Virus record (IMG/VR): IMGVR_UViG_3300023174_005338
Span: 186,001 to 250,000 of that record
DNA length: 64,000 nucleotides
Reading direction: 5' to 3' (one strand)
Shown: in pieces, positions 4,180-46,298 of the stretch
How the letters are laid out: every line of letters starts with the position of its first letter
Position numbering within the stretch: the stretch's first letter is position 1
The notes under the pieces: model-generated
Databases searched by the model: none
Seen by the model: only the letters and a program-made list of their open reading frames with translations
What the model was told of the DNA's origin: nothing
Position numbers and translations under genes: made by a program

Positions 4180-4935
4180 ATGAAACAACTTGCAAATCAA
4201 ATCGCAGAATGGATCAAGAACTATGCCAACAATGCTGGCATCCAGTCATTGGTGGTGGGTATATCGGGCGGAATTGACAGTGCTGTGGTCAGCGCACTGT
4301 GCGCCCGAACAGGGTTGAACACCGTGGCAGTGACCATGCCCATACGCCAACGTCCGGATCTACACGATCTCAGCATGCGCCAAGGTGCCTGGTTGGCACA
4401 ACACTTTGACAATGTACGGCATGAAATCATTGATTTGACTTCGACCTTTGATGAGTTTGAACAGCGTCTTGCCTCCTATGCTAATTTGTTGGGCATGGCC
4501 AACAGTCGCAGTCGACTGCGCATGGTTACCTTGTATCAAATTGCCCAAAGTGTTAATGGCATTGTAGTGGGCACAGGCAACAAGGTAGAAGACTTTGGTG
4601 TGGGATTTTATACTAAGTACGGCGACGGTGGCGTGGATATCAGTCCCATTGGTGACCTGCTCAAAACCGAAGTTTGGGATTTGGGCCGTGAGTTAGGTAT
4701 CCTGCAAGACATCATTGATGCGGCGCCCACAGATGGACTGTGGGATGATGGACGCACTGATCAAGATCAATTGGGTGGACTGACCTATGCTGAACTTGAG
4801 CTGGCCATGGCCCAAGACGAAGGTAGTAAACTGGTCAAAAATGGGCTGGAACTAGAACGCTTGCAAAAGTATCAAGCCTTGCGTGCTCGTAGCCTACACA
4901 AAATGCAACCTATTCCGGTGTTCAAAAAATCTTAG
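4180..4935 (+). CDS. nadE: NH3-dependent NAD+ synthetase
   Basis: PP-loop SGGIDS, NSRSRLRM, GTGNKVE, YTKYGDG, DISPIGDL, APTDGLW; no glutaminase domain. Confidence 0.92.
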   Translation: MKQLANQIAEWIKNYANNAGIQSLVVGISGGIDSAVVSALCARTGLNTVAVTMPIRQRPDLHDLSMRQGAWLAQHFDNVRHEIIDLTSTFDEFEQRLASYANLLGMANSRSRLRMVTLYQIAQSVNGIVVGTGNKVEDFGVGFYTKYGDGGVDISPIGDLLKTEVWDLGRELGILQDIIDAAPTDGLWDDGRTDQDQLGGLTYAELELAMAQDEGSKLVKNGLELERLQKYQALRARSLHKMQPIPVFKKS

Positions 4936-7961: not shown

Positions 7962-8972
7962 ATGCGGTATGTGCTGATTGACACAGCAAACATGTTCTTC
8001 CGTGCCAGACATGGTGCTTTTAGAGCCAGTGATACCTGGGAAAAAGTGGGTTTCGCCCTGCATGTGACCTTGATGGCTGCCAACAAAATGGCCCGGCGTT
8101 TTGAAGCTGATCACATGGTATTTGCCTTGGAAGGTCGCTCGTGGCGCAAGGACCTGTACAAACTCTACAAAAACAACCGCGCTGTGGCCCGTGCCGCACT
8201 CACAGAAGCCGAAGTTGAAGAGGACAAGATGTTCTGGGAAACCTATGATAATCTGACTAAATACTTGAGTGAGAAAACCAACTGTAGCGTGATTCGTTGT
8301 GCTACAGCCGAAGGCGACGACGTCATAGCTCGCTGGATCGCATTACATCCCCAAGACGAACATGTTATAGTCAGCAGTGACACTGACTTTGTTCAGCTAG
8401 TGGCACCCAACGTCAAGCAGTACAACGGAATCACCGACGAATTAATTACCACGGAAGGAATCTTCGATGCCAAAGGCAAAGCGGTTATCGATAAGAAAAC
8501 TAAAGAACCTAAGTCAACGCCGAACCCAGAATGGCTACTCTTTGAAAAGTGTATGCGAGGAGATAGCTCGGATAACGTGTTCTCAGCGTATCCCGGTGTC
8601 AGAACTAAGGGCACTAAGAACAAGGTTGGACTCCAGGAAGCGTTTGCGGACAAAGACAAAAAAGGTTACAACTGGAACAACATGATGTTGCAACGCTGGT
8701 TAGATCCCGACGGTGTGGAACACCGTGTGTTGGACGATTATGAACGCAATCGAACCTTGATTGATTTGACAGCGCAACCTGCAGACATCAAGGCTCTAGT
8801 GGATGCGGCCATACGTGAACAGATCAGCCACAAGGATGTGGGTCAGGTGGGAGTGCGATTCATGCAGTTTTGTGGCAAGTATGAACTGAACAAATGTTCG
8901 GAATCAGCCGACAGCTTTGGTCGCTGGATGAATGAAACATACAAAGGAGTGCTCAATGAAGCTAATAGCTAA
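7962..8972 (+). CDS. rnh: T4-like RNase H / 5'-3' exonuclease (FEN family)
   Basis: LIDTANMFFR, AEGDDVI, VSSDTDFVQL, GDSSDNVFS acidic motifs. Confidence 0.85.
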   Translation: MRYVLIDTANMFFRARHGAFRASDTWEKVGFALHVTLMAANKMARRFEADHMVFALEGRSWRKDLYKLYKNNRAVARAALTEAEVEEDKMFWETYDNLTKYLSEKTNCSVIRCATAEGDDVIARWIALHPQDEHVIVSSDTDFVQLVAPNVKQYNGITDELITTEGIFDAKGKAVIDKKTKEPKSTPNPEWLLFEKCMRGDSSDNVFSAYPGVRTKGTKNKVGLQEAFADKDKKGYNWNNMMLQRWLDPDGVEHRVLDDYERNRTLIDLTAQPADIKALVDAAIREQISHKDVGQVGVRFMQFCGKYELNKCSESADSFGRWMNETYKGVLNEANS

Positions 8973-10325: not shown

Positions 10326-10413
10326 GGGCCGGACGCCGTATTGGTTGCAGGCAGCGGACTCATAATCCGCCTCAGAAATGACACTGTGGGTTCAAATCCC
10401 TCCCGGCCCACCA
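10326..10413 (+). tRNA. tRNA with CAT anticodon and long variable arm (Met/Ile2 by anticodon; charging identity uncertain)
   Basis: Acceptor GGGCCGG/CCGGCCC, A73, encoded CCA; anticodon arm GCGGA-CTCATAA-TCCGC; T arm GTGGG-TTCAAAT-CCCTC; 15 nt variable region. Confidence 0.85.
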
Positions 10414-10611: not shown

Positions 10612-10677
10612 ATGTGGTTGATATTTTTTGCCTTTATGGCCATAGTCATTTGTTATGGCATCATGTGGTTAAACTAA
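10612..10677 (+). CDS. Putative 21 aa hydrophobic micropeptide MWLIFFAFMAIVICYGIMWLN
   Basis: Manual translation; starts 2 nt after upstream stop; single TM-like. Confidence 0.35.
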   Translation: MWLIFFAFMAIVICYGIMWLN

Positions 10678-10696
10678 CATCTGGACGAACAATGAA

Positions 10697-10765
10697 ATGG
10701 AACAAGATTACAGTTTTGCCATTGGTGTAGTTGTGGTAGCTGTTATGTTCTTATTGATTTTATAG
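10697..10765 (+). CDS. Putative 22 aa hydrophobic micropeptide MEQDYSFAIGVVVVAVMFLLIL
   Basis: Manual translation; TM-like C-terminus; weak RBS. Confidence 0.4.
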   Translation: MEQDYSFAIGVVVVAVMFLLIL

Positions 10766-10814
10766 TTTCCACGTTCTTAAAACGTGGTGGTAGGACGGGC
10801 CGCAGGAGACAAGC

Positions 10815-10880
10815 ATGGAAGAATTTCAAAAACGGACATTGATTCTGGTGTTGTTGGCTTTCCATGCCATGACTATGTAG
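10815..10880 (+). CDS. Putative 21 aa micropeptide MEEFQKRTLILVLLAFHAMTM
   Basis: Manual translation; AGGAG RBS 6 nt before ATG. Confidence 0.45.
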   Translation: MEEFQKRTLILVLLAFHAMTM

Positions 10881-10886
10881 AATTGG

Positions 10887-10915
10887 TTGACACATAAATA
10901 GGTGTGTCGTATAAT
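10887..10915 (+). promoter_or_regulatory. sigma70-type promoter for tmRNA, with embedded CATAAATA
   Basis: TTGACA-17 nt-TATAAT; CATAAATA at 10893-10900. Confidence 0.8.
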
Positions 10916-10921
10916 AACGAT

Positions 10922-11177
10922 ATTGTTGTAATTCCTTCCAAGTGAAGGCGCTGTGGACCTGGGTGCAACTCCCAGCATCTCCACCCAAGTGTATTGTCTA
11001 GTATGTTTGGGCGGGGATGAATTAGGATCGACATGGTGAGCTAGTGCGGACGGCAACAGGCAAGGCGAAGGACCTAATCCTAGCAACTCTATTAAATGCA
11101 AACGCATCTAATGACGAGACCTTTGCCTTAGCGGCATGATCTCCGGGGCAACTATGCCTTGTGACCCAAACTAGTTC
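10922..11177 (+). ncRNA. ssrA: tmRNA, circularly permuted (two-piece); tag ANASNDETFALAA
   Basis: T arm CTGGG-TGCAACT-CCCAG and 3' acceptor CATCTCC-A (10959-10983) precede the 5' acceptor GGGGATG (11013-11019); G3.U70; tag frame 11098-11139; outer ends approximate. Confidence 0.9.
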
Positions 11178-11206
11178 AAAAAAAGCGACAGAAATGTCGC
11201 TTTTTT
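11178..11206 (+). terminator. Intrinsic terminator after tmRNA
   Basis: A7-GCGACA-GAAA-TGTCGC-T6. Confidence 0.85.
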
Positions 11207-11281
11207 GTTGACCTATGTCTACAATTACTAAATACTGGGTTGAGAAATCTCTCAGCATTCTTTTAAAAGGAAAATTCAAGC

Positions 11282-12403
11282 ATGAAAAAACTACTAGCAA
11301 CTATGTTGTTATCTCTTGGCGTAGCCACTTTGGCTCAAGCTCAGAGTTCAGTTACCATTTATGGTATCTTGGATGTGGGTTTCAGTGATAGAAATCTCAA
11401 AGGTTCTCCAGCAACAGCCACAAACACTCTCAACTCCAATCAGATTGGATCCAGCTACGAAACCGCTAGCCGTCTTGGTTTTCGAGGCACAGAGGATTTG
11501 GGCGGCGGCACTTCTGCATTCTTTACCATTGAAACTGGCCTGACACCAACCAGCTCCACAGTAAGCACATTCAATAATCGTCAAACATTTATTGGTCTTG
11601 GACAAAAAGGACTGGGTAATGTAGCCGTTGGTACACAGTATGGTCCAATCCACAAGGCTGTTGGTGTAACTGATCCAGGCCAGTACAACGGAGTTATTGG
11701 TTCGGTGATCTATCCAGCTGCTGGCACCGACGGTGGCCAAGCAAGTGTTGATGCGGCCTACACGATTCGTTTCGCGAATAGCGTGACAGCAACCATGGAT
11801 CGTCGTGCAGGCTTCAGTGCCAACGCGATCTACTCGCTCAACAACCAAGACAGCACCAAAACAGGTGCAACTACTGGTGGCACAGTCAACAACAACGCCT
11901 ATGGTCTTGGTGCTGACTACCTCATGGGTAAATTGTATGCTACCTTAGCATATCAAAGTGTCAAAAGCATCAACGACACATCAGCCACTGCCAGTGTTAG
12001 CTCGGCATTTGTTGGTACCAACACCACAGACAGCCAGCTTTATGCAGGTGCCACATATGATTTGGCCAAGGTCAAATTGTTTGCAGGTTACACTGATCGC
12101 AAGATCCAGAGCAATTTGAACAGCAATGCTAGTTTGAATCGTACAGCACAGCAGATTGGTGTACGTGGTTTCGTTACCAAGAAAGTTGAAGGTTGGGCTT
12201 CTGTGGGCAACGGCAAGTACAATGCATTTGGTACAAACCAAGCCACAGCCAACTTCACAGCTTACCAAGTTGGTAGCAACTACTGGATGAGCAAGCGCAC
12301 GAACTTGTATGCTATCGTAGGTAGCACACAAACTTCAAGCACAAGCCAAACCGGCGCACTCAGTGGCAACCAGTATGCCTTAGGCATGCGTCACACATTC
12401 TGA
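11282..12403 (+). CDS. Gram-negative outer-membrane porin, betaproteobacterial type
   Basis: Signal peptide ...AQA, SSVTIYGILDVG, SRLGFRGTEDLGGG, NNRQTFIGL, C-terminal GMRHTF. Confidence 0.9.
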   Translation: MKKLLATMLLSLGVATLAQAQSSVTIYGILDVGFSDRNLKGSPATATNTLNSNQIGSSYETASRLGFRGTEDLGGGTSAFFTIETGLTPTSSTVSTFNNRQTFIGLGQKGLGNVAVGTQYGPIHKAVGVTDPGQYNGVIGSVIYPAAGTDGGQASVDAAYTIRFANSVTATMDRRAGFSANAIYSLNNQDSTKTGATTGGTVNNNAYGLGADYLMGKLYATLAYQSVKSINDTSATASVSSAFVGTNTTDSQLYAGATYDLAKVKLFAGYTDRKIQSNLNSNASLNRTAQQIGVRGFVTKKVEGWASVGNGKYNAFGTNQATANFTAYQVGSNYWMSKRTNLYAIVGSTQTSSTSQTGALSGNQYALGMRHTF

Positions 12404-15332: not shown

Positions 15333-16340
15333 TCAGCGACCGCCGCAACTGTTCACACATCCATATAATCGACCTTCGGCTATGCTATTTTTTGCCCAGG
15401 TCGCCTCTACACTGTTAAACCAAGCAACACAATGTTCAAGATCGTATTCTAATGCATTATTTTCCTTGATCAAGGGCAACAACTGTTGGTTACCTGGATG
15501 TGTCATTTGTCCTGGATAGAATCCCAAAAAGCAACAAGGATAAACTGACCCGTCGGCAGCTATGTATATTTCTTTCAAACGCTTGTGGTGACAAGTCAGT
15601 TGTAAAGGCATGGTATCTTTGTCAGATTTAATTGTGCGGGGATCAAACCACGTGATATGACTCTCCAGGAGATCTTTGACCGGTGGCGGATTTTGCCGCT
15701 CATGATCAGTGTAAGGTTGTCCTAACCAATGACTGAATTCTCCGGTGCGAGCGTACACTGGTCCACGATTGCGTCCTTCATCAATGTTTTCAAATCCAGC
15801 GAATCCCAAGTCCAGAGACAATTTCTTACAGGCCGCTTCCTGATGGCGATTGTGATCAAATGGAATAAATCTCCAGACAGCGTGGCCACCGGCTGCAATA
15901 AAAGCCTGAGCATTTGCAATCACAGTGTGCCAATTGGTGTCTTGTCTGTACACATCGTGCGTGTCAGCCAGACCGTCCAGGGCAAATCCAATCCGCACAC
16001 CAGGCCTGGCCAAGGAAGCCCACCATTCTGGAGTGCGCATGCTGCCGTTGGAGTTGATATACACCGGCACACCCTGATCGCAGAGATAGTGTACAATTTC
16101 ATGAGCATCATGTGCCAGACCAAAATCTCCCAAATTACCATTGAAGCTGATACCTCTACTGAGTTGTTGTAAAAAATCTGGTTTCAATATGTGCTTGATG
16201 TTGTCCAAGGTCAACTCGGTCACAGGATACCCACCATTGTAATCGTATCCGCGATAGTTTCTCATGCACATGGGGCAACGAGCATTACAACGGGTGGTCA
16301 ATTCTATTTGAATCTGACAAATGTCAGCGAGTTCGAGCAT
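15333..16340 (-). CDS. Radical SAM protein with C-terminal SPASM/twitch-like domain
   Basis: CNARCPMC; C-terminal C...[13 protein letters not shown]...CVNSC; start MLELAD at 16340 lies 5 nt after a TATAAATA (16353-16346). Confidence 0.85.
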
Positions 16341-16363
16341 AGAGATATTTATAAAATGGGTGG

Positions 16364-16392
16364 TTGACAAGGTATAAATACCTGTTTATAAT
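16364..16392 (+). promoter_or_regulatory. sigma70-type promoter with embedded TATAAATA, driving the putative attenuator leader
   Basis: TTGACA-17 nt-TATAAT; TATAAATA at 16373-16380. Confidence 0.8.
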
Positions 16393-19050: not shown

Positions 19051-19130
19051 ACCCCGGTGGCGCAATTTTTGGTAGACGCACTCTCCTCAGAAGGGAGCTG
19101 TTGAAGGTTCGAATCCTTCCCGGGGTACCA
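19051..19130 (+). tRNA. trnL: tRNA-Leu(CAG) with short variable loop
   Basis: ACCCCGG/CCGGGGT, A73, CCA; Leu-type 3 bp D stem; loop CTCAGAA; 5 nt variable region. Confidence 0.85.
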
Positions 19131-20186: not shown

Positions 20187-21329
20187 ATGTTCACGCTAGA
20201 TCACTGTGATTTAACACCGGACAAATTTGGATATTATTTGGTTGGCAACGCAAAGACCTATAGTAAACTAGAAGCGTTGGAAATACAAAAAGTAACCGGC
20301 GACTTTCCCCAGTGGAATTTCAACAATGAAATTTATCAAATCCAGGACTGGACACAAGAGCCCAGCACCACGCTTTGGGAACTTTACAAACAACGTGCAG
20401 TGCAAATAAGAAATTCATATGACTATGTGGTTTTATTTTACAGCGGGGGCAGTGACAGCCAAAACATGCTCAGCGCCTGGATGGCCAGTGGTTTAAAAAT
20501 TGATGAAATTGCCACTCAATGGAATGTTGCTGGAACTGGAAGCAGATCAACTTTTTGGAATGGAGAAGTAGATCGAGTGGCTTTGCCCTGGATCCAACAA
20601 TTAAAAAATCAAGGCTTGGAATTTAATTTTCGCTTGCTGGATATTAGTGCAGATACTCAAAATGTCATTGAGTTTCATGCACATGATTATGCCTATCATG
20701 CCAATACCGCTCTAAGTCCCAACAACTACGCCAAAAACATGTGGCGACATCAGATTACCGAATACAGACAAATCATAGAGTCTGGAAAAAAACTGTGTTT
20801 TGTATGGGGCAGTGAAAAACCGTTTTTGCTTTGGGATGGTCGACACTACTGTGTGTTCCAAGACATCATTGACAATTGTGTGAATCCCTACACTCAGCGT
20901 CAATATCACCAAGGCTGGTACGATGAACTGTTTTATTGGGCTCCTGAACTGCCACAAATTGTGATAAAACAAGTTCATGTATTAAAAAATTTTTGCCAGA
21001 CTAACTTGGATCCTGCAAACTTTCAGGACACGTTTACAAGACATGGATATAATCCACACATTAAAAAATGGCTACGAGAAGATGTTGTTAAAACTCTACT
21101 GTATCCTTACTGGGATACTTCGACTTATGTGGATGGCAAACCTCCCTCGATGGTGTTAAGTTGGAGAGACAATTGGTTGTTTGTCAGCACACAGGGACAG
21201 CAATATCGTGACTATTTACAAAGTCTTAAACAACAATTAGATTTGACCTGGTTGAATGATGTTGATCACATCAGCAAAGGTTTAAAAAATTGTATCTCAC
21301 CCCATTACTATTTAGAGGAAAAAAAATGA
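20187..21329 (+). CDS. PP-loop (adenine nucleotide alpha-hydrolase-like) protein of unknown function
   Basis: VVLFYSGGSDS; paralogue at 24928-26232. Confidence 0.6.
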   Translation: MFTLDHCDLTPDKFGYYLVGNAKTYSKLEALEIQKVTGDFPQWNFNNEIYQIQDWTQEPSTTLWELYKQRAVQIRNSYDYVVLFYSGGSDSQNMLSAWMASGLKIDEIATQWNVAGTGSRSTFWNGEVDRVALPWIQQLKNQGLEFNFRLLDISADTQNVIEFHAHDYAYHANTALSPNNYAKNMWRHQITEYRQIIESGKKLCFVWGSEKPFLLWDGRHYCVFQDIIDNCVNPYTQRQYHQGWYDELFYWAPELPQIVIKQVHVLKNFCQTNLDPANFQDTFTRHGYNPHIKKWLREDVVKTLLYPYWDTSTYVDGKPPSMVLSWRDNWLFVSTQGQQYRDYLQSLKQQLDLTWLNDVDHISKGLKNCISPHYYLEEKK

Positions 21330-22264
21330 ATATACTACGCGGTTTAATTTTATCATTGATCTTGTTTGCCACCGGTGTGCATGCAGATAAAAAGAATATC
21401 ACAGTGACTCTGCCATTTCCAGCCGGCGGCGCCACAGATCGAGTTTGGCGAGTATTGGATTCCAAGCTCACTGAGCAATTGCAAAGTCACGGTATCAAGC
21501 TACAGACAGAATACAGGGTCGGAGCCGGGGGCGGCATAGCCGGCACACATGTGGCCACTGCACCGGTTGGTGAAACACGTTTGCTGTTCACAAGTGCTAG
21601 TCTAATGATAGCACCCAGCTCAAATGACAATATAAATTATCGACCCAACGATTTTACAATGTTGGGATATTTTGGAAGTTTGCCAATGATGGTAGTAGTT
21701 CCAGCTGCTGGGCCAAAAAACATCAAGGAATTACAACAACTGTGTCGGACTAGGCCTATAATGTATGGGTCAGCTGGTGTTGGATCAACTGTGCATTTGG
21801 TTTCAGAAGAATTTTTAAAGTCTATCAACTGTTCTGCCACCCATGTGCCTTATAAAGGTGCCCCTGCAGCCATGCCTGATCTTGTGTCAGCACGCCTGGA
21901 TTTTGTAGTTGACTGGATTTCCAGCCCGACCATGAGCTTGGTCGAACAGAATCGACTCAATGTTGTTTTGATATTAGGACAAAACAGACTTAAACAATTT
22001 CCTCAGGTGCCAACTGCTGGGCAGGCAGGTTTAAAATTAGAGGCTCTAAATAATTGGCAGGTATTTGTAGCAAACAGCACAGCTGATACCAAGGAAATTG
22101 AAATCATACGTCGAGCCGTGCAACGAGTCATGCGCGATCCAGACAATCTAAAACTATTTACAGATCTAGGACTGGAAGGTGCAGGTAATACAGTTGATGA
22201 AAATTTTTTGTTTGACAACTATCAATATTATCAAAAAATCATTAAAAAATACAACTTAAAGTAA
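21326..22264 (+). CDS. Tripartite tricarboxylate transporter substrate-binding protein (Bug/TctC)
   Basis: Signal peptide, FPAGGATD, GAGGGIA, YGSAGVGSTVHL, HVPYKG. Confidence 0.88.
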   Translation: MNILRGLILSLILFATGVHADKKNITVTLPFPAGGATDRVWRVLDSKLTEQLQSHGIKLQTEYRVGAGGGIAGTHVATAPVGETRLLFTSASLMIAPSSNDNINYRPNDFTMLGYFGSLPMMVVVPAAGPKNIKELQQLCRTRPIMYGSAGVGSTVHLVSEEFLKSINCSATHVPYKGAPAAMPDLVSARLDFVVDWISSPTMSLVEQNRLNVVLILGQNRLKQFPQVPTAGQAGLKLEALNNWQVFVANSTADTKEIEIIRRAVQRVMRDPDNLKLFTDLGLEGAGNTVDENFLFDNYQYYQKIIKKYNLK

Positions 22265-22418: not shown

Positions 22419-23366
22419 ATGACCGATAAACTTAAACTTCGTTGGGTTTTAGCACACGTACCTTACGATCTATTCCTGCGCAGTGCAGCAGCCTTTGCTA
22501 AAAAAGCTCACGAAATCAGTAATGGTCAAATTGAAATTGAGATCATGGGTCTTGAACAATACGAACAACGATACAACAACAATCAACCCGTCAACAAATA
22601 TGAAGTGTTGAATCTGGTTGATCAGGGTGTTATTGAAATGAGTCAGATGTACAATGCACAACTGGGTGCGATCAATCATGATCTACGTGCTTTGGACATG
22701 CCTTATCTGTTTGAAAATCACGAACATGCACGCCGTGTGCTTGACGGAGATATCGGACTCGACATGCTACAAGGTCTTTCCAAAAACAGCAACGTTAGAG
22801 GATTGGCATTTACATATTCAGGTGGATTCCGCATGATGGTGGCCAATGAGCCCTTGGAATCAGTGAATGACATTTCTGGACAACGAGTTCGCGTGGGACT
22901 CACACCAGTGGCTTCTGACACTTTCCGTTTGCTGGGTGCAGATCCAGTGGCCATGGGTGTGCATGCTGTAGCTGATGCCTTGAGAGACAATCAAGTGGAT
23001 ATTGGTGAAAATACCTGGGCTAGATTTTTCCGATCTGGTGTGTCGCACTATGCCACCCACGTGGCCAACACACGTCACAGCCTGTTCCTGACTGCAATTA
23101 TAATTAACAAAAACGTCTGGAATGGATTCACTGCCGAAACACAGGCCATGCTACAAGCAGCAGCATTACAAGCAGCCGAAGAAGAGCGCCAAGAAAGTTT
23201 AGCAGACAATGACGCAGTCATGGCCAAATGCCAAGAAGTCGGCATCAAGGTCTGGGACTGGAGTGATGAGCAATGTGCAGAAATGAAAGCAATCACAGCA
23301 CCTGTGTATGAAAAATACAAGGATCAGTTTTCAACCAACCTTATTGACAAAATCAAACAGTCATAA
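22419..23366 (+). CDS. dctP: TRAP transporter substrate-binding protein DctP-like
   Basis: LDMPYLF, GGFRMM, GQRVRV, LGADPVAM, VDIGEN, HSLF; no obvious signal peptide. Confidence 0.85.
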   Translation: MTDKLKLRWVLAHVPYDLFLRSAAAFAKKAHEISNGQIEIEIMGLEQYEQRYNNNQPVNKYEVLNLVDQGVIEMSQMYNAQLGAINHDLRALDMPYLFENHEHARRVLDGDIGLDMLQGLSKNSNVRGLAFTYSGGFRMMVANEPLESVNDISGQRVRVGLTPVASDTFRLLGADPVAMGVHAVADALRDNQVDIGENTWARFFRSGVSHYATHVANTRHSLFLTAIIINKNVWNGFTAETQAMLQAAALQAAEEERQESLADNDAVMAKCQEVGIKVWDWSDEQCAEMKAITAPVYEKYKDQFSTNLIDKIKQS

Positions 23367-26319: not shown

Positions 26320-27210
26320 ATGAACATTATACGTGCAATATTGACAACTTTCCTTTGTTGGACTACTGTGGCCACGGCACAACCCAAATTAGAAATAGTT
26401 GTGCCTAATCCTCCTGGAGGAACCACGGATCAAGTGGCACGGCACATACAGTCTATTTTGTCTAGTCACACTGACAGATCTGTCATAGTTGTCAATAAAC
26501 CCGGTGCTTTTGGTAAAATAGCCATGGACTATGTGACCAGCAACTCGACCAAAAAAGACATGATACTGATAATCAGCACAGGAACTTTTGTACAGTCTGT
26601 GATAGACAGTAACAATGACTTGAAGAATTTTTATGTGGTAGCTCCTGTGATGACAACTCAAAGTGTGTTGGTGACTACCACAACATCTAATATCCGCAAC
26701 TGGAAAGAATTCTTGGCGCGAGCACGCAATGAACCTCTCAGTTGTGGTGTCAGCAACGGTGCTTCTAATCTGGCCGCTCAATACCTAATAAAAAAATTAA
26801 ACTTGCCCAATGTAGAAATTATTCCATTCAGTGGCAGCACAGGGGTCAATACATCTTTGCTTGGTAACCATATACAATGCGCCTTTGATACTTTGACTAC
26901 CCTGCAACCGCTGATTCAAGATGGAAAACTCTCCATATTGGCCACCATGGCCAACAAACCTCCCAAGCAATATCCCAATTTGCTATCAATCGAACAGAAT
27001 GTCCCTGGGTTTGATTTCCAAAACTGGTACGCCGTGGCTGTACATGATAAATCGTCAACAGAATTCATGAACTGGTATAGATTGGTCATGCCACAACTGC
27101 TCCAAGGAATTTCTAGTTTTGATGGAGTTTATGCAACACGCCCTCGGGCAGATTGGATCTCTGATCAAACTCAATTTGTTAACACCATGCTACAATACAA
27201 CAAAAAATAG
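26320..27210 (+). CDS. Bug/TctC substrate-binding protein
   Basis: Signal peptide, PNPPGGTTD, NKPGAFG, IPFSG, FQNWYAV. Confidence 0.82.
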   Translation: MNIIRAILTTFLCWTTVATAQPKLEIVVPNPPGGTTDQVARHIQSILSSHTDRSVIVVNKPGAFGKIAMDYVTSNSTKKDMILIISTGTFVQSVIDSNNDLKNFYVVAPVMTTQSVLVTTTTSNIRNWKEFLARARNEPLSCGVSNGASNLAAQYLIKKLNLPNVEIIPFSGSTGVNTSLLGNHIQCAFDTLTTLQPLIQDGKLSILATMANKPPKQYPNLLSIEQNVPGFDFQNWYAVAVHDKSSTEFMNWYRLVMPQLLQGISSFDGVYATRPRADWISDQTQFVNTMLQYNKK

Positions 27211-41882: not shown

Positions 41883-42415
41883 AAATAAAAATAACTGCTG
41901 AGTCTGTAGGCGTCTGCTGGCACAGGATTAAACATACCATGCCATTGTAAGGGCTGGCTACCGTCAGGATCAAGATGATTCAACATGATGTAGCCTGAAT
42001 TGGGCACACTGTCAAATTGATGTTTCAAACTATTTGTGTTTTTAAAATGATAAAACCCAGTTCCGTACTGGTCACTGGGCATTATCCAATATAGTTGCAT
42101 GGCATTAGGTAAATGCCCGTCGGTGTGCATGCTACAAGTAAATCCAGGTTCGTCCAACCACCAGTGCCCGTGGCAGGATTGAAATTCAGTGCCCAGGCTC
42201 TGATTGATTGTTGGCAAACACTTTTCTATGTATCGATTGACTTGTCTGACTCGTGAGTCATCATTTGTAATTTTTCTACGGGGCCAATTTTCTTGAAGAT
42301 TTTCTTTTTGCCAAGGCAGTTCAGTCCATTGTATTACTAAAATTTCATTCAATTGCTCTTGGGGCAACAGATCACTCACATGCCATAAACGATGATCAAT
42401 TTGTTCAATCATCAA
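41873..42415 (-). CDS. Putative 2OG-Fe(II) oxygenase-like protein
   Basis: MHTD (HxD), distal WHG, RLSSY. Confidence 0.5.
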   Translation of the reverse strand: MMIEQIDHRLWHVSDLLPQEQLNEILVIQWTELPWQKENLQENWPRRKITNDDSRVRQVNRYIEKCLPTINQSLGTEFQSCHGHWWLDEPGFTCSMHTDGHLPNAMQLYWIMPSDQYGTGFYHFKNTNSLKHQFDSVPNSGYIMLNHLDPDGSQPLQWHGMFNPVPADAYRLSSYFYFYK

Positions 42416-43878
42416 CTGAAAACCTTAACTCCATACTTTTGTTCAAATCTATCAGCGTCAGCACGATCGTTGATCATAGGCTCGCCTCTAATGTTGAGAC
42501 TGGTATTCAGCAACATGGGACATCCAGTGGCTTCATACCAGGCCTCTAAGAGCGATCTAATGCCTGAGCCGTCAGACGCAACAGTCTGTACTCGGCTAGT
42601 GTTATCCACATGACAGATAGCAGGGTATAGGTCAGGACGGCGGCAATTTGCGACTGACTGCATATAAGGACTGCTATGCCAACCGCGGGGCATATGAAAA
42701 AGTTCATGCACATGCTCTGCCAGGACAACCGGCGCAAACGGTCTAAACTTTTGCCTACGTTTGATCTCATTGACTTGATCCTTTATATCTGATCCTCGGG
42801 GATCGGCGAGGAGACTTCGATTTCCAAGGGCTCGGGGTCCAAATTCTGCTCGACCACTAGCGACACCGACGATTCTATCACTTTGTAAATGATCAACGAG
42901 GGCATCAACAGGATACGTTCCTGAGATTGCATGGCCAAGGAACGCATTCCGCCAGTGGAGGCGTCTTCCATGGGCCAGTGCGGCAGCACCAAGGCTGTTG
43001 CCAGCATCGCCAGGACAAGGCATGATCCAAATGTTTTCAAAATATTCACCGAGTTTTCTATTAGCAAGACAGTTCAAAGCCACGCCGCCCTGATAGACTA
43101 GATTAGAACTCCAGCCAAATTCTTGGGCACGACGCATAACACTATATATCAATTCTTCTGTTAAAACCTGGGCACTTGCGGCAATATCTTCGTTGGATGC
43201 AGACCGCAACCAGTCAGGCTCAATGCCTATGTGTAGATTGTCTTCCAGCAAGGCCCGGCATTCTTCAACGTAACATGGCTGTCCGTAGGCACTCATGCCC
43301 ATGGTGATGTATTCTTCATCTAGGGGGTGTAGGCCAATGCGCTGAGTAATCGCACTATAAAACAGCCCGATGCTCCTGGGATAAGTTTGGCTCCAAAGTT
43401 TCTTATAACATGCTCGATTTGTTGCGTTATATTCTGCTCCCCATATCGAGATGGTATCAAACTCGCCTATGGCATCTACGATCACACAAGTGGCACGATC
43501 GTAGGGGCTGGTTTGAAAACCTGCAGCCGCATGGCACAGGTGATGACTGTAAGTTTTTATCTGTCCGGGCGGATGTTGCAACCATGAGCCCAATTGATTC
43601 TTTAATATCTGCTTGACAGTCACATTGGACCAATCTATACCTTGTCCTGACACAAAATTACGTGCTTGTTTTAACCAAGGACGTTCATAATATGCAATGG
43701 TGTCTATGTCGTATTCACAGAATTCTGTCAATAATTCTGGACAAAGATTGGCATCGTTTTTCTTTTTTGAATATCGTTCGCTGTGACCGGCAAATACAAT
43801 TTCACCGTCGCTGCGTATGAGCGTGGCAGCTGCGTCATGAAATCCAGCACTGAGTCCCAGTGTGTACTGATGCTTCAT
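42412..43878 (-). CDS. Carbamoyltransferase (CmcH/NodU/TobZ family)
   Basis: GFHDAAA, HHLCHA, GGVALN, GPRALGNRSLLADPR, RPFAP, LNTSLN. Confidence 0.93.
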   Translation of the reverse strand: MKHQYTLGLSAGFHDAAATLIRSDGEIVFAGHSERYSKKKNDANLCPELLTEFCEYDIDTIAYYERPWLKQARNFVSGQGIDWSNVTVKQILKNQLGSWLQHPPGQIKTYSHHLCHAAAGFQTSPYDRATCVIVDAIGEFDTISIWGAEYNATNRACYKKLWSQTYPRSIGLFYSAITQRIGLHPLDEEYITMGMSAYGQPCYVEECRALLEDNLHIGIEPDWLRSASNEDIAASAQVLTEELIYSVMRRAQEFGWSSNLVYQGGVALNCLANRKLGEYFENIWIMPCPGDAGNSLGAAALAHGRRLHWRNAFLGHAISGTYPVDALVDHLQSDRIVGVASGRAEFGPRALGNRSLLADPRGSDIKDQVNEIKRRQKFRPFAPVVLAEHVHELFHMPRGWHSSPYMQSVANCRRPDLYPAICHVDNTSRVQTVASDGSGIRSLLEAWYEATGCPMLLNTSLNIRGEPMINDRADADRFEQKYGVKVFS

Positions 43879-43976
43879 TTGTAAATAAACGGGTCTCGTT
43901 TGCGAAGTTCTTTTAATTTTTTACGATAACGAATTTCTAATTTGATACGATCGATTAAGATTTTTATCCAAGACAT
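43875..43976 (-). CDS. 33 aa basic peptide MSWIKILIDRIKLEIRYRKKLKELRKRDPFIYK
   Basis: Manual translation; fills the gap and is ATGA-coupled to the carbamoyltransferase. Confidence 0.6.
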   Translation of the reverse strand: MSWIKILIDRIKLEIRYRKKLKELRKRDPFIYK

Positions 43977-45019
43977 TTGATTTGTTTCTCCATGTAATCG
44001 GTGTCACTCCAGTCATATTCATACTCATCACCGGCTGTGCTGGTGCGTATGGCATGAACATTAAGATGTGTATTTAATTGATGCCAAATTTCACGATAAT
44101 CTTCTGTTCCAAAACTGCGAACAAGATCCACTTGCCCTACCTGTGGATGTCCAATGGTCAAACTCTTGTTGTTTGGGTCAATGCCATTGGCCGTTAGCCA
44201 TTCGCGGAATTCCTTTAACTGTCGGATCTGCCAGGGAAATTCACCCGGATTGTTGGCCCACTCTATGTCAAAGTCGCCCGCGGCCTCAGTCTGATTTTTG
44301 AGGCTGGTGGTTGTGAGTTCTCCTAGTCTTGAGTCACGTCCTTCGTCCTGGAACACTTCCCAGTGATGTTTGCCAACGGCTTTGTTCACACCCACATATA
44401 CTCCGCCCAGACTGCGATTGATTGTGTCAATCCCAAACAGTTCATAGTCTTCTGCATCCAACACGAATCTTGGAGCTGATAGCCAGCACATGAGTTGGCT
44501 GGGTCTTTGCCATTCAGGTGCTGTGTGTTTTTTGCGCCACGATAGCTGCCAGCTTTCAAACTCGTGACACAGGAGATTTAATTGTCTGATGTGCCAGCGT
44601 GTGGCGTTGTCGGCACGCCAGTAGTAATCGCTGATGTGTCCGCTGCTGCCTTGTAGATCTTCAAAGTATCTGTGCAGTTGATTGAAATGATCGTGATTGA
44701 CTCCGCCTCGATCATCCACACTGTTGATCATATCAAAGTGATCCGTTATATGATATCCTATGCTGGAATTGTTTATGGCCTGTATGCTGAGATTTATTTG
44801 TTCCAATAGATAAGGGCCATTTCTAGGACCGTCTGCAAATCCAAAAAAACAATAGTTCTTTTCCAAGTGATAATTATTTTGTAGAAGATTGTTCAAAGCG
44901 GCCAGCCATTTGCGACTGAGACTGTTGTCATACACGTTGACATACACACGCAACACATTGTCTGGCGTGCCTAGATCTAGCTCTACAACATCAAGCGGTA
45001 ATTGATTGGTACCAGTCAT
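43964..45019 (-). CDS. Hypothetical protein
   Basis: 351 aa ORF coupled within the radical SAM operon. Confidence 0.7.
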   Translation of the reverse strand: MTGTNQLPLDVVELDLGTPDNVLRVYVNVYDNSLSRKWLAALNNLLQNNYHLEKNYCFFGFADGPRNGPYLLEQINLSIQAINNSSIGYHITDHFDMINSVDDRGGVNHDHFNQLHRYFEDLQGSSGHISDYYWRADNATRWHIRQLNLLCHEFESWQLSWRKKHTAPEWQRPSQLMCWLSAPRFVLDAEDYELFGIDTINRSLGGVYVGVNKAVGKHHWEVFQDEGRDSRLGELTTTSLKNQTEAAGDFDIEWANNPGEFPWQIRQLKEFREWLTANGIDPNNKSLTIGHPQVGQVDLVRSFGTEDYREIWHQLNTHLNVHAIRTSTAGDEYEYDWSDTDYMEKQIKCLG

Positions 45020-46298
45020 AGATATCCTGATTTGATCTTAGTATGTCGGCCATGGTATAGGAATCGCCACGTATTTGTTCTAATTTTAGCACACGACGTT
45101 TGCCTTTTGCAAGTTCTGCTTGCCATTGTTCAGGCCATTGTTCAGCGAATGTGGGTCGTTGTTTGAGTTGTAGCAACACATCTTGTAAGGCACCAGCAGG
45201 CAGTTTTGCTACCAGATTGTCTACGGTGCTGTCTAACAACGGTCTAGGCAAGGCCAAAGGACTCATAATGATATCGGGAGTAAAACTAAATATTACCTTG
45301 GCCAAGACATCCACTCCTAGCTCATCGGCTAGCTGTTGTATGTTTTCCACTTCAAACAGGCCAGGCAAGGTCAAAGTAAAGTCAATGCGCATTTGTCTGC
45401 GATGTCGAACATGTTCAAGGCCTTGTTTAAAGTTTACCAACCACCCATCGTAGGCCAGTCCTGTGCGGATGTATTCTCCTGTTTTTCCTGTTCCGTCGAG
45501 GCTGGCACAAATTTGCCAATCACGTAGATATACCAAGACATCACGGTAAAGATTACAACCACGCCAATACACGCGACTGAGATTAGTATTGTATCTTGCA
45601 TAAACATTTTTTGCATCTCCTAGTTCAATAATTCTGCGCATGTAGCGCCAGTGTTGTTCGTACATCAGTGGTTCGCCGCCCACCCAATAAACTTCTTCCA
45701 CACGATGTTGTTCCACAGCCAAGGCAAATTCAGCTTCAATCTGGCTGTCTTGATAGGCTGTGATTTGTTCGCGCACAGCGGGTTGCATCCAGGTGTTTTT
45801 GGGATTGCTCCAATCAATCATGTTGTGTTGACGTTGTTCGCTTTCCCACGCACTGGATAACATGTCTCCGCAAGTACGACATTTGAAATTACAAAGATTA
45901 CTGAATCTGTAATCCCAACTCACAGGTCGAACCCGGGTGAATCCATAGCGATCTGTAGACCTCATACATTCTTCATATTTGTGTTCAAACAATCGATTGA
46001 AATAATCTCTATATACATCAGTGTTCAATAACTTGTTGTTGCACACTTCGCATTCAGGCAATGTCTCGCCTTTCATCATTCTTAACCTCACGCTTCGCAT
46101 GTGAGGACTGTTCCAGTGTTCGTCTAGGCCAACCGGTTGATAGGTACCAGTGCCGGTGGCAGTGTCAATATACTGTTCAAAGTTTTGTGCAGGTTCTCTG
46201 CTGGCACAACACATGCGTCTTTCAGTTTGTGGACTAAGGTATGTGTGTGTCCATGGCGCCATGCACAAGGTTTCGGGTCTTTTAGCAGGGGCCGGCAT
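44991..46298 (-). CDS. Radical SAM protein with N-terminal twitch/SPASM-like domain
   Basis: CMAPW...MCC...CEVC; CNFKCRTC; VGGEP; NTNL. Confidence 0.88.
   Translation of the reverse strand: MPAPAKRPETLCMAPWTHTYLSPQTERRMCCASREPAQNFEQYIDTATGTGTYQPVGLDEHWNSPHMRSVRLRMMKGETLPECEVCNNKLLNTDVYRDYFNRLFEHKYEECMRSTDRYGFTRVRPVSWDYRFSNLCNFKCRTCGDMLSSAWESEQRQHNMIDWSNPKNTWMQPAVREQITAYQDSQIEAEFALAVEQHRVEEVYWVGGEPLMYEQHWRYMRRIIELGDAKNVYARYNTNLSRVYWRGCNLYRDVLVYLRDWQICASLDGTGKTGEYIRTGLAYDGWLVNFKQGLEHVRHRRQMRIDFTLTLPGLFEVENIQQLADELGVDVLAKVIFSFTPDIIMSPLALPRPLLDSTVDNLVAKLPAGALQDVLLQLKQRPTFAEQWPEQWQAELAKGKRRVLKLEQIRGDSYTMADILRSNQDIYDWYQSITA

What the first reader, a model, noticed from the sequence alone, without database searches (positions are those of the whole stretch)
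10887..11206. Circularly permuted two-piece tmRNA carried by a phage
Seen: the tRNA-like 3' half (T arm 10959-10975, acceptor strand CATCTCC, A73) comes before the 5' half (GGGGATG, 11013). A 29 nt intervening segment between them can fold (CCCAA...TTGGG). The acceptor stem has the G3.U70 alanine determinant. CATGG/CTGTG and GAGCTAG/CTAGTTC helices close the structure. Resume codon GCA after ATTAAAT gives tag ANASNDETFALAA-stop. The gene has its own promoter and terminator; the T loop is TGCAACT and CCA is not encoded. Established: permuted ssrA occurs in alphaproteobacteria, some marine cyanobacteria and a betaproteobacterial lineage (Dechloromonas); phage tmRNAs are known, mostly one-piece. 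Inference: the phage supplies its own ribosome-rescue RNA with a betaproteobacterial-style tag plus an extra ASN. No smpB is visible in the window.
Basis: partly seen in the sequence, partly recalled or inferred. Interest (0 to 1): 0.8.

Follow-up and report, generated by a model that had tools for sequence, protein, structure and literature searches.

The report
Phage-borne two-piece (permuted) tmRNA gene
A freshwater jumbo phage carries an intact, circularly permuted "two-piece" tmRNA (ribosome-rescue RNA) gene of the betaproteobacterial type; the call is correct, but phage two-piece tmRNAs are already known, so this is a new lineage of a known kind and not a new kind of thing.

Summary
ARAGORN calls a permuted tmRNA (tag ANASNDETFALAA). 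Rfam beta_tmRNA scores 131.6 bits (threshold 84) end to end, and tmRNA_permuted scores 124.1 bits (threshold 47). The gene has a perfect sigma-70 promoter, a 7-bp acceptor stem with G3.U70, a T arm, a 27-29-nt spacer hairpin, P2 helices, pseudoknot PK1, the tag frame, a 3' hairpin and a terminator.

The window is a jumbo phage: its RNase H is 54% identical to PA5oct's, it has virion proteins, and it is syntenic with 320-kb viral contigs. The probable host is Polynucleobacter; this rests on inference.

The gene sits in the same slot in relatives. It belongs to a diverse beta-type lineage found on 82 IMG/VR and 74 metagenome contigs. That lineage is absent from 185,579 bacterial species genomes and lies outside the Rhodocyclaceae clade.

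The odd T loop always co-occurs with a remodelled D-loop analogue. No smpB is in the window.

Novelty is modest. Permuted phage tmRNAs are catalogued (53 of 133 unique forms, PMC9004378), although I found no beta-type one in deposited phage genomes. Processing, charging and tagging remain untested.

The parts
10887..10915 (+). Sigma-70 promoter: -35 TTGACA, 17-nt spacer, -10 TATAAT. The inferred start is about 10922, right at the first P2 base.
   Evidence: 12 of 12 matches. The Rfam beta_tmRNA model includes this promoter region and aligns to it.
10922..10985 (+). Acceptor piece (first RNA piece): the 5' strands of P2, the T arm, the 3' acceptor strand, A73 and C74-C75.
   Evidence: Helix assignments come from the Rfam alignment and from the covariation analysis.
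10959..10975 (+). T arm: stem CTGGG/CCCAG with loop TGCAACT. The loop is non-canonical (G at position 55, A at 57).
   Evidence: the T stem is 100% canonical, and the two outer pairs, which the search pattern left free, show 5 and 4 pair types; the variant loop always co-occurs with an altered D-loop analogue (9 of 9 against 0 of 175).
10976..10985 (+). Acceptor 3' strand CATCTCC, discriminator A73, then CC. The next base is C, so A76 must be added after transcription.
   Evidence: C follows ACC in 60 of 97 bacterial beta-type genes, whereas 70 of 87 viral-type genes encode CCA.
10986..11012 (+). Intervening segment removed from the precursor. Together with C74-C75 it forms a 12-bp hairpin stacked on the acceptor stem across an A.C mismatch.
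   Evidence: MFE fold; 67 of 86 viral relatives keep a stem of 9 bp or more at the base of the spacer, although spacer length ranges from 25 to 210 nt.
11013..11206 (+). Coding piece (second RNA piece): the 5' acceptor strand, the D-loop analogue, the P2 3' strands, PK1, the tag frame, the 3' hairpin and the terminator.
11013..11031 (+). Acceptor 5' strand GGGGATG (G3 pairs with U70), then the D-loop analogue AATTAGGATCGA.
   Evidence: L393, found independently through the porin, has GGGCCCG/CGGGTCC with G3.U70 retained.
11032..11058 (+). P2 3' strands. CATGGTG (11032-38) pairs with CGCTGTG (10949-55). GG (11052-53) pairs with CC (10934-35). CAACA (11054-58) pairs with TGTTG (10924-28).
   Evidence: 1287 of 1288 and 920 of 920 cells are canonical. 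The pairs 10950-53 with 11034-37 were unconstrained by the search pattern and show 3-4 pair types each.
11058..11081 (+). Pseudoknot PK1. Stem 1 is AGG/CCT (11058-60 with 11073-75). Stem 2 is AGGA/TCCT (11069-72 with 11078-81).
   Evidence: 78% and 82% of cells are canonical, with up to 4 pair types per pair. L099 has CAGT/ACTG and GAT/ATC at the same places.
11098..11139 (+). Tag reading frame: resume codon GCA, peptide ANASNDETFALAA, stop TGA.
   Evidence: the terminal Ala codons of relatives use all four synonymous codons, indicating selection at the peptide level.
11150..11176 (+). 3' hairpin AACTA/TAGTT with the conserved loop GCCTTGTGACCCAAA. The loop's GCCT could pair with AGGC at 11063-66.
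   Evidence: Rfam structure. L108 has GACAT/ATGTC, a compensatory change; the second and third pairs are canonical in 165/166 and 151/164 cells. The long-range AGGC/GCCT pairing is invariant and therefore untestable.
11178..11206 (+). Intrinsic terminator: an A run, stem GCGACA/TGTCGC, then a T run.
   Evidence: paired in the Rfam model. (fold, -15.4 kcal/mol). Not listed by the simple terminator scan.

Best explanation
This is an intact, expressed-looking ssrA gene of the circularly permuted beta type (Rfam RF01850), resident in a freshwater jumbo phage.

Proposed mechanism:
1. The host sigma-70 RNA polymerase transcribes one precursor from the promoter at 10887-10915 to the terminator at 11206.
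2. The spacer hairpin (10986-11012) is cut out, by RNase P at G1 (11013) and by 3' trimming after C75.
3. The host CCA-adding enzyme supplies A76.
4. The acceptor piece (about 65 nt) and the coding piece (about 194 nt) stay together through the acceptor stem and the P2 helices.
5. Host AlaRS charges the RNA through G3.U70.
6. Host SmpB and EF-Tu deliver it to ribosomes stalled on broken mRNAs.
7. Translation resumes at GCA (11098) and appends ANASNDETFALAA. The C-terminal ALAA sends the product to ClpXP-type proteases.

The likely benefit is to keep ribosomes free in an infected cell, where host and phage mRNAs are being cut. This would act alongside the phage's own tRNAs.

Shown here: the gene anatomy, family membership, conservation and covariation, its position in a phage, and its virus-specific lineage. 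Inferred: transcription, processing, charging, use of host SmpB, the fate of the tag, and the benefit to the phage.
For: - Detection: ARAGORN calls a permuted tmRNA with a tag. Rfam RF01850 scores 131.6 bits (threshold 84) over model positions 1-331, and RF04321 scores 124.1 bits (threshold 47).
- Expression signals: a perfect promoter and a terminator.
- Precursor: the fold gives the T arm, the acceptor stem and the spacer hairpin.
- Covariation over 184 unique sequences supports the T stem, P2, PK1 and acceptor pair 5-68.
- Independent relative: L393, on a 319,721-bp contig with a porin only 60% identical, has the gene in the same slot. Four acceptor pairs are changed but G3.U70 and the tag ANASNDEVFALAA are kept.
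- Peptide selection: synonymous codon variation at a conserved ALAA.
- Co-evolved loops: the T-loop variant is perfectly associated with a changed D-loop analogue, which argues for co-evolution over decay.
- Phage identity: RNase H 54% identical to PA5oct's, virion structural protein matches, PHROG hits, and synteny with IMG/VR contigs of up to 320 kb.
- Virus-resident lineage: the pattern occurs on 82 IMG/VR and 74 metagenome contigs and in none of 185,579 bacterial species genomes. It lies outside the Rhodocyclaceae clade.
Against: - No experimental or transcript evidence. One metatranscriptome holds exact contigs over 10676-10993 at a depth of about 2.5, but they start upstream of the promoter, so DNA carry-over is not excluded. 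Other RNA runs hold at most 23% of the gene's words.
- The T loop lacks U55 and G57, which are nearly universal. The consequences for SmpB, EF-Tu or modification enzymes are unknown.
- PK1 stem 1 is only 3 bp in this copy.
- CCA is not fully encoded.
- No smpB is in the window, and the rest of the genome was not seen.
- The host is inferred and not demonstrated. If it is Polynucleobacter, its own ssrA type was not examined.
- Part of the apparent invariance is by construction. The search patterns fixed acceptor pairs 1-3, the inner T stem and the 5' strand of P2-A.
- A related phage (L392) has the porin but no adjacent tmRNA, so the gene is dispensable in some relatives.
Confidence: 0.78

Rival explanations
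1. The RNA is made, but it does not act as a normal rescue RNA. With its remodelled T loop and D-loop analogue and its lengthened tag, it might compete with the host tmRNA for SmpB or ribosomes as a decoy or inhibitor. Alternatively it might give tagged proteins a different fate that serves host takeover.
For: - The T loop UGCAACU together with the D-loop change is confined to a minority of the clade (9 of 184) and needs at least 3 changes on the tree.
- Tags in the viral lineage are very diverse. They include conserved ~29-residue tags ending in LAV.
- A CDS-less mycobacteriophage tmRNA was reported to inhibit the endogenous tmRNA (PMC11915505).
Against: This copy keeps every element needed for normal function: G3.U70, A73, PK1, an Ala resume codon, an NDE motif and a C-terminal ALAA. 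The ALAA ending is under peptide-level selection. The closest relatives with canonical T loops carry the same tag (L393).
Confidence: 0.14
2. It is a relic: a piece of host ssrA picked up by imprecise excision of a temperate phage, or an attP-type copy of the 3' end of ssrA, with no function of its own.
For: Phages and genomic islands often integrate into ssrA and carry fragments of it (PMC9004378; PMC4383910, listed). Two IMG/VR sequences, L015 and L025, fall inside the bacterial clade and look like such host-derived copies.
Against: - The gene is complete from promoter to terminator.
- It is conserved in the same slot across phages whose proteins are only 60-90% identical.
- It shows compensatory changes.
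- It has no counterpart in 185,579 bacterial species genomes.
- It is only about 70% identical to the nearest bacterial genes.
- No integrase domain was found among the window's ORFs.
Confidence: 0.03
3. The stretch is bacterial and not viral. On this reading the window is a bacterial chromosome or a chimeric assembly, and the tmRNA is the cell's own gene. The neighbouring porin and solute-binding protein genes would fit this.
For: Cell-like genes lie nearby: a Porin_4 gene directly downstream, plus TctC and DctP genes and sugar-nucleotide enzymes. The nearest cellular porin is chromosomal in Polynucleobacter.
Against: - The porin plus DUF6492 plus PIG-L block, with the tmRNA, recurs on contigs of 320-364 kb that are full of small ORFs without Pfam matches and of tRNA arrays.
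- The RNase H is closest to PA5oct's, and the window has virion and tail-fibre-like proteins.
- A single metagenome contig covers the region continuously at even depth.
- The real Polynucleobacter locus has a quite different context.
Confidence: 0.03

Closest known systems
Two-piece (permuted) ssrA of Rhodocyclaceae: Rfam RF01850 beta_tmRNA, the 'third lineage' of Sharkady and Williams 2004 (Dechloromonas/Azonexus, Thauera, Accumulibacter and others)
   Same: - Same gene order, same helices, and the same conserved 3' loop GCCUUGU-ACC-AAA.
- Same promoter-to-terminator layout. The full-length model match is well above threshold.
- Same tag core, NDExFALAA.
- The base after ACC is often C, as here.
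   Different: - Only about 70% identical, and outside the bacterial clade on a long branch.
- 45% GC against 55-68%.
- A 13-residue tag against the invariably 10-residue ANDE[RQH]FA[LIV]AA.
- Part of one P2 sub-helix is deleted.
- The T loop is non-canonical.
- It is carried by a phage whose probable host, Polynucleobacter, is not in that bacterial family.
Permuted tmRNAs of cultured phages: OM43 phage Melnitz; pelagiphages HTVC008M and Mosig; Caulobacter phiCbK-like phages; Synechococcus phages S-CAM1, S-CAM3 and S-SSM7; Stenotrophomonas, Citrobacter and Bordetella phages (PMC9004378, Table S1)
   Same: A complete two-piece ssrA carried by a large lytic-looking phage of aquatic bacteria, often near tRNA genes. 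The function is presumed to be support of translation, and none has been tested biochemically.
   Different: - Those described in detail are of the alpha or cyanobacterial type.
- Melnitz's gene sits with a glutamine riboswitch. Rfam found no riboswitch here.
- No record among the 50,697 INPHARED genomes matches this lineage beyond a T-arm-sized stretch.
Unannotated permuted tmRNAs in Achromobacter phage JWDelta (KF787094), Tunturiibacter phage Tunturi_5 (PP885688, 309 kb) and Xanthomonas phage Xoo-sp13 (MN047793, 309 kb)
   Same: Phage-borne permuted tmRNA-like genes, two of them in jumbo phages, recognised by RF04321. They share a T arm and acceptor strand similar to the one in L393.
   Different: They do not reach the beta_tmRNA threshold. 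ARAGORN finds a tag in only one of them, and it is not degron-like. They are not syntenic with this phage.
One-piece tmRNAs of mycobacteriophages (Bxz1 group) and other phages, and the CDS-less tmRNA of phage DS6A
   Same: A phage-encoded trans-translation RNA that depends on host SmpB.
   Different: These have standard gene order, or lack a tag frame. They are unrelated in sequence and have different hosts.

Membership tests
Permuted (two-piece) tmRNA, beta type (Rfam RF01850 / RF04321) | Covariance-model score at or above the curated threshold, over the full model | tested here: met
   RF01850 scores 131.6 bits against a threshold of 84, over model positions 1-331. RF04321 scores 124.1 bits against 47. 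Nine relatives score 117-173 bits.
Permuted (two-piece) tmRNA, beta type (Rfam RF01850 / RF04321) | Circular permutation: the 3' tRNA-like half (T arm, acceptor 3' strand, ACC) lies upstream of the 5' half (G1...), separated by a removable spacer | tested here: met
   The 3' half occupies 10959-10985 and the 5' half starts at 11013. ARAGORN flags the gene as permuted. The spacer forms a hairpin whose basal stem is kept in relatives.
Permuted (two-piece) tmRNA, beta type (Rfam RF01850 / RF04321) | A 7-bp acceptor stem with the G3.U70 alanine identity pair and discriminator A73 | tested here: met
   The invariance seen in the pattern-fetched set is partly by construction. L393, found independently, keeps G3.U70 while four other pairs change.
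Permuted (two-piece) tmRNA, beta type (Rfam RF01850 / RF04321) | T arm with a canonical T loop (UUCGAUU type: U54, U55, C56, purine 57, A58) | tested here: inconclusive
   The T stem is present and covaries. The loop is UGCAACU: U54, C56 and A58 are kept, but position 55 is G and 57 is A. The variant is shared by 9 of 184 sequences and always comes with a changed D-loop analogue.
Permuted (two-piece) tmRNA, beta type (Rfam RF01850 / RF04321) | P2 helices that hold the acceptor piece and the coding piece together | tested here: met
   The helices 10924-28 with 11054-58, 10934-35 with 11052-53, and 10949-55 with 11032-38 are 100% canonical, with compensatory changes at the unconstrained pairs. 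One short sub-helix of the Rfam model is partly deleted here.
Permuted (two-piece) tmRNA, beta type (Rfam RF01850 / RF04321) | Pseudoknot PK1 just upstream of the resume codon | tested here: met
   An H-type pseudoknot at 11058-11081. Both stems covary, although stem 1 is only 3 bp in this copy.
Permuted (two-piece) tmRNA, beta type (Rfam RF01850 / RF04321) | A short tag frame that starts at an Ala codon without an AUG and ends in a hydrophobic ...ALAA degron plus a stop | tested here: met
   GCA at 11098, then ANASNDETFALAA and TGA. The ALAA ending is conserved with synonymous codon variation.
Permuted (two-piece) tmRNA, beta type (Rfam RF01850 / RF04321) | Processing into two RNAs, alanylation, SmpB binding, and tagging activity | not testable with these tools
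   The only data are low-depth metatranscriptome contigs, which are inconclusive.
Permuted (two-piece) tmRNA, beta type (Rfam RF01850 / RF04321) | Placement within the bacterial (Rhodocyclaceae) beta clade | tested here: not met
   The 97 bacterial sequences form one clade (support 100, branch length 1.4) that excludes the window and 84 other viral sequences. The window's gene is therefore a structural member of the family but belongs to a separate, virus-resident branch.
Phage-encoded tmRNA | The gene lies in a genuine phage genome, not in a host flank | tested here: met
   Phage hallmark similarities, synteny with contigs of 320 kb, and no integrase domain found.
Phage-encoded tmRNA | An accompanying phage smpB (not required; absent from most phages that carry a tmRNA) | tested here: not met
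   No SmpB Pfam hit among about 74 window ORFs. Only 64 kb of a genome of probably more than 300 kb was examined.

The most novel reading that the evidence does not exclude
The beta-type two-piece tmRNA may be primarily a viral gene family. It is a diverse, old lineage maintained in freshwater phages, many of them large. Those phages include ones whose hosts, such as Polynucleobacter, probably use a one-piece ssrA. The single tight Rhodocyclaceae clade would then be either its sister or a derivative, meaning that a phage gene replaced the cellular ssrA. Within the viral lineage the RNA has been re-engineered in three ways: alternative pairs of T loop and D-loop analogue, tags ranging from 9 to about 30 residues, and in some copies a small membrane-peptide ORF nested in the spacer. 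This suggests functions beyond plain ribosome rescue.
Probability: 0.15. Interest if true: 0.75.

Novelty: new member of a known kind. Interest (0 to 1): 0.4.

Why it matters
Phage-borne tmRNAs are one of the least understood ways in which large phages prop up or rewire host translation. None of the two-piece ones has been tested biochemically.

This locus adds a well-defined example that still has all its parts, and it comes with about 90 natural sequence variants. Those variants give ready-made covariation data for the beta-type structure. They include a natural experiment in T-loop and D-loop co-variation, and a wide range of tag peptides.

The result also shows that the betaproteobacterial permuted form is far more diverse in viruses than in cells. 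That bears on how the third permuted lineage arose.

For genome annotation, it warns that ssrA hits in metagenome bins can come from phages.

Tried and rejected
It is complementary and appears in the single-sequence MFE, but it is rejected by covariation (39% canonical). L108 has no complement there, and the 3' strand instead forms a local hairpin with compensatory changes.
- **Thermodynamic cofold of the two pieces.** It recovers the acceptor stem, T arm and terminator but not the comparative P2. It was not used for the model.
- **Nucleotide searches of INPHARED** with the window's tmRNA, with 25 kb of the window, and with the L393 tmRNA. There was no relative; only T-arm-length hits appeared.
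- **Strict phage-type pattern in bacterial genomes.** Zero hits. This is informative, but it means no donor was found.
- **Host-capture hypothesis (recent copy from Rhodocyclaceae).** Rejected by about 70% identity and by tree position.
- **Rooting the beta-type tree with other permuted tmRNAs.** Only 112 columns were usable. Viral monophyly was not rejected (p-AU 0.62) and the bacteria formed a clade (support 93). The direction of transfer cannot be told, and some 'outgroup' rows may themselves be beta-like.
- **Expression and processing from public RNA runs.** The only exact RNA-library contigs are at depth of about 2.5 and start upstream of the promoter. Inconclusive.
- **Supplements of the tmRNA database paper, and Sharkady and Williams 2004.** Nothing usable was held. 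The ssrA form of Polynucleobacter could therefore not be checked.
- **Local hairpin CCUUC/GAAGG (10934-48) as an alternative to the short P2 sub-helices.** It is 78% canonical overall and holds only in the viral sequences, where the pattern fixed most of it. Left open.

Full report
**1. The observation**

ARAGORN reports a permuted tmRNA at 10894-11230 with tag ANASNDETFALAA. Rfam gives two matches above threshold. RF01850 beta_tmRNA scores 131.6 bits (threshold 84, E = 7e-40) and covers the whole model, from its promoter region to its terminator (10873-11206). RF04321 tmRNA_permuted scores 124.1 bits (threshold 47). This is not a chance resemblance.

**2. Anatomy**

- A perfect sigma-70 promoter (TTGACA, 17 nt, TATAAT; 12 of 12 matches) sits at 10887-10915. 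It places the start at about 10922, the first base of P2.
- The acceptor piece runs to C75 at 10985. It holds the P2 5' strands, the T arm (10959-75), the acceptor 3' strand CATCTCC and A73.
- The next base is C, so A76 is not encoded. The same is true of 60 of 97 bacterial beta-type genes, whereas 70 of 87 viral-type genes encode CCA.
- The spacer (10986-11012), together with C74-C75, folds into a 12-bp hairpin. It stacks on the acceptor stem across an A.C mismatch.
- The coding piece starts at G1 (11013). It contains a D-loop analogue, the P2 3' strands, an H-type pseudoknot PK1 (11058-81), the tag frame (11098-11139), a 3' hairpin with the family's conserved loop (11150-76) and a terminator (11178-11206).

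**3. Covariation**

I collected 184 unique beta-type sequences: the window, 86 viral or metagenomic, and 97 bacterial. I scored each helix in window coordinates.

A caveat applies. The search patterns fixed acceptor pairs 1-3, the inner three T-stem pairs and the 5' strand of P2-A, so invariance at those positions is by construction. The results at unconstrained positions are as follows.

| Helix | Result at unconstrained positions |
|---|---|
| T stem, two outer pairs | 100% canonical, with 5 and 4 pair types |
| P2, 10950-53 with 11034-37 | 735 of 736 cells canonical, 3-4 pair types each |
| Acceptor pair 5-68 | 4 pair types |
| PK1, both stems | covary |
| 3' hairpin | compensatory changes (AACTA/TAGTT here, GACAT/ATGTC in L108) |

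An independent check comes from L393, which I reached through the porin gene and not through any tmRNA pattern. Its tmRNA has the acceptor stem GGGCCCG/CGGGTCC, so four pairs are changed and G3.U70 is kept. It also has a different T stem, an encoded CCA, and the tag ANASNDEVFALAA.

**4. The tag**

Relatives carry ANDETFALAA, ANDEVFALAA and similar tags. The window's subclade has ANAS- or ANAA- followed by NDE[VT][FY]ALAA. Across the set, the last two Ala codons use all four synonymous codons while the residue stays the same. That shows selection on the peptide.

**5. The T loop**

UGCAACU has G at position 55 and A at 57. This variant (TGCAA[A/C]T) occurs in 9 of 184 sequences. It always comes with a changed D-loop analogue, either AAYYAGGA or UACUCAGUAU in place of the usual ACNNGGYU. 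None of the 175 canonical T loops has such a change. The variant needs at least three changes on the tree. This looks like a co-evolved alternative elbow and not like decay. What it means for SmpB or EF-Tu is unknown.

**6. Is it a phage?**

Yes.
- The RNase H/flap endonuclease (7962-8972) is 54% identical to that of the PA5oct group.
- The 1601-residue ORF and its neighbour match virion and tail-fibre proteins.
- Other ORFs hit PHROG families strongly.
- Many ORFs have no Pfam match, and tRNA genes are scattered through the window.
- L099, L100, L108 and L393 are syntenic, and the last two lie on contigs of 320 kb.
- The downstream porin has 80-91% identical copies on many contigs of 320-364 kb.
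- No integrase domain and no SmpB domain was found in about 74 ORFs.
- The DNA comes from freshwater and lake metagenomes.

**7. Host (inference only)**

The nearest cellular porin (60% identity) lies in a normal chromosomal context. It belongs to a 44% GC bacterium whose cytochrome b is 92-94% identical to those of named Polynucleobacter strains. The phage is 45% GC and carries TctC, DctP and porin genes typical of Burkholderiales. I could not examine the ssrA of Polynucleobacter.

**8. Lineage**

The phage-type form of the acceptor piece is found on 82 IMG/VR contigs and 74 metagenome contigs. It is found on none of the 185,579 bacterial species genomes. Rfam classifies diverse members as full-length beta_tmRNA at 117-173 bits.

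Bacterial genes are about 70% identical to the window's. They come from 55-68% GC genomes and all carry 10-residue tags. On the tree they form a single clade (support 100, branch length 1.4), with only two 'viral' sequences inside it. The window and 84 other viral sequences lie outside and are much more diverse. An attempt to root the tree was unresolved. So this is not a recent capture from a host. The direction of any ancient transfer is open.

**9. What is already known**

Buchholz et al. 2022 (PMC9004378) described the two-piece ssrA of phage Melnitz. By ARAGORN they counted 53 two-piece forms among 133 unique phage tmRNA structures, in the Caulobacter phiCbK group, cyanophages, pelagiphages and others. 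The 2025 tmRNA database lists 79 phage sequences.

I also found unannotated permuted tmRNAs in phages JWDelta, Tunturi_5 and Xoo-sp13. These match the generic permuted model only.

I found no beta-type example among 50,697 deposited phage genomes or in the searchable literature.

**10. Verdict**

This is a correct and careful first-stage call. The gene is real, intact, under selection, and phage-borne. It is a new member, from a so far undescribed viral branch, of a known kind of element. Its activity rests on inference from anatomy.

I score interest at 0.4. The kind is known, but the virus-only beta lineage, the paired T-loop and D-loop change, and the tag and spacer diversity give specialists something concrete to test.

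Noticed in passing
window 11282-12403 (+): A Gram-negative porin gene (Porin_4, E = 2e-36) lies 76 nt downstream of the tmRNA terminator. It has 80-91% identical copies on many contigs of 320-364 kb, so it is conserved cargo of this jumbo-phage clade. The nearest cellular homologue (60%) is a chromosomal Polynucleobacter porin.
   Followed up: partly
window 21290-22264, 22419-23366, 26320-27210 (+): Two TctC ('Bug') proteins and one DctP periplasmic solute-binding protein are encoded by the phage. Together with the porin, they suggest the phage boosts host nutrient uptake. The family mix is typical of Burkholderiales.
   Followed up: partly
Relatives L359, L363, L287, L327, L374, L246, L311, L348 (spacer between ACC(A) and G1): In these copies the tmRNA spacer is 90-99 nt. 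It holds AAGGA, 6 nt, then ATG and a conserved hydrophobic mini-ORF (MF[DE]NW[QH]W.Y.WG.A..NY...). The ORF is conserved at the protein level across nucleotide-divergent copies. It may be a small membrane peptide gene nested in the pre-tmRNA spacer. The window's spacer lacks it.
   Followed up: partly
Relatives such as L100, L241, L251, L322, L378, L380 (tmRNA tag frames): A sub-lineage of the same viral tmRNA family has conserved tags of about 29 residues. They read AKANTGEVTVSGKN[IV]KFSARS..RQSLAV and end in LAV or FAV, not LAA. Another sub-lineage has ...FTGNTVGGRVAVAA. L100 is a syntenic relative of the window phage. Such long, conserved tags suggest a role beyond a simple degron.
   Followed up: no
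window 42412-52629 (-): A carbamoyltransferase (NodU/Nol-like, E = 6e-92) is followed by five consecutive paralogous radical-SAM proteins of 405-471 residues. A further radical-SAM gene lies at 15333-16370. The block looks like a modification or biosynthesis cluster of unknown product.
   Followed up: no
window 10326-10413 (+): The tRNA-Met (CAT) gene is 88 nt long and has a long extra arm, which is unusual for a Met or Ile2 tRNA. It encodes its CCA, unlike the tmRNA 500 nt downstream. Rfam also finds a tRNA at 19051-19127 that ARAGORN does not list.
   Followed up: no
L394 (KF787094 about 19.7 kb), L395 (PP885688 about 158 kb), L396 (MN047793 about 39 kb): Achromobacter phage JWDelta and two 309-kb jumbo phages, Tunturi_5 and Xoo-sp13, carry permuted tmRNA-like genes. 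RF04321 scores 66-96 bits against them. They are not annotated in the records.
   Followed up: partly
L133 (JBDNIA010000294.1, labelled a Crocinitomicaceae MAG); also L183 and L199: Beta-type permuted tmRNAs occur on contigs binned to Bacteroidota and Desulfobulbus MAGs. L133 is 40% GC, has tag ANSEYALAA and scores 152 bits with RF01850. These are probably misbinned phage or betaproteobacterial contigs. Three Cupriavidus records (L137, L196, L200) also carry a beta-type gene.
   Followed up: no
L392 (204-kb contig, porin 82% identical): This relative has the porin but no tmRNA next to it, and the upstream genes differ. The tmRNA-porin pairing is therefore not universal in the clade.
   Followed up: no
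window 4180-4935 and nearby: The window contains an NAD synthase, a cytidylyltransferase-like protein and a phosphoribosyltransferase. Together they suggest a phage NAD salvage or synthesis module.
   Followed up: no
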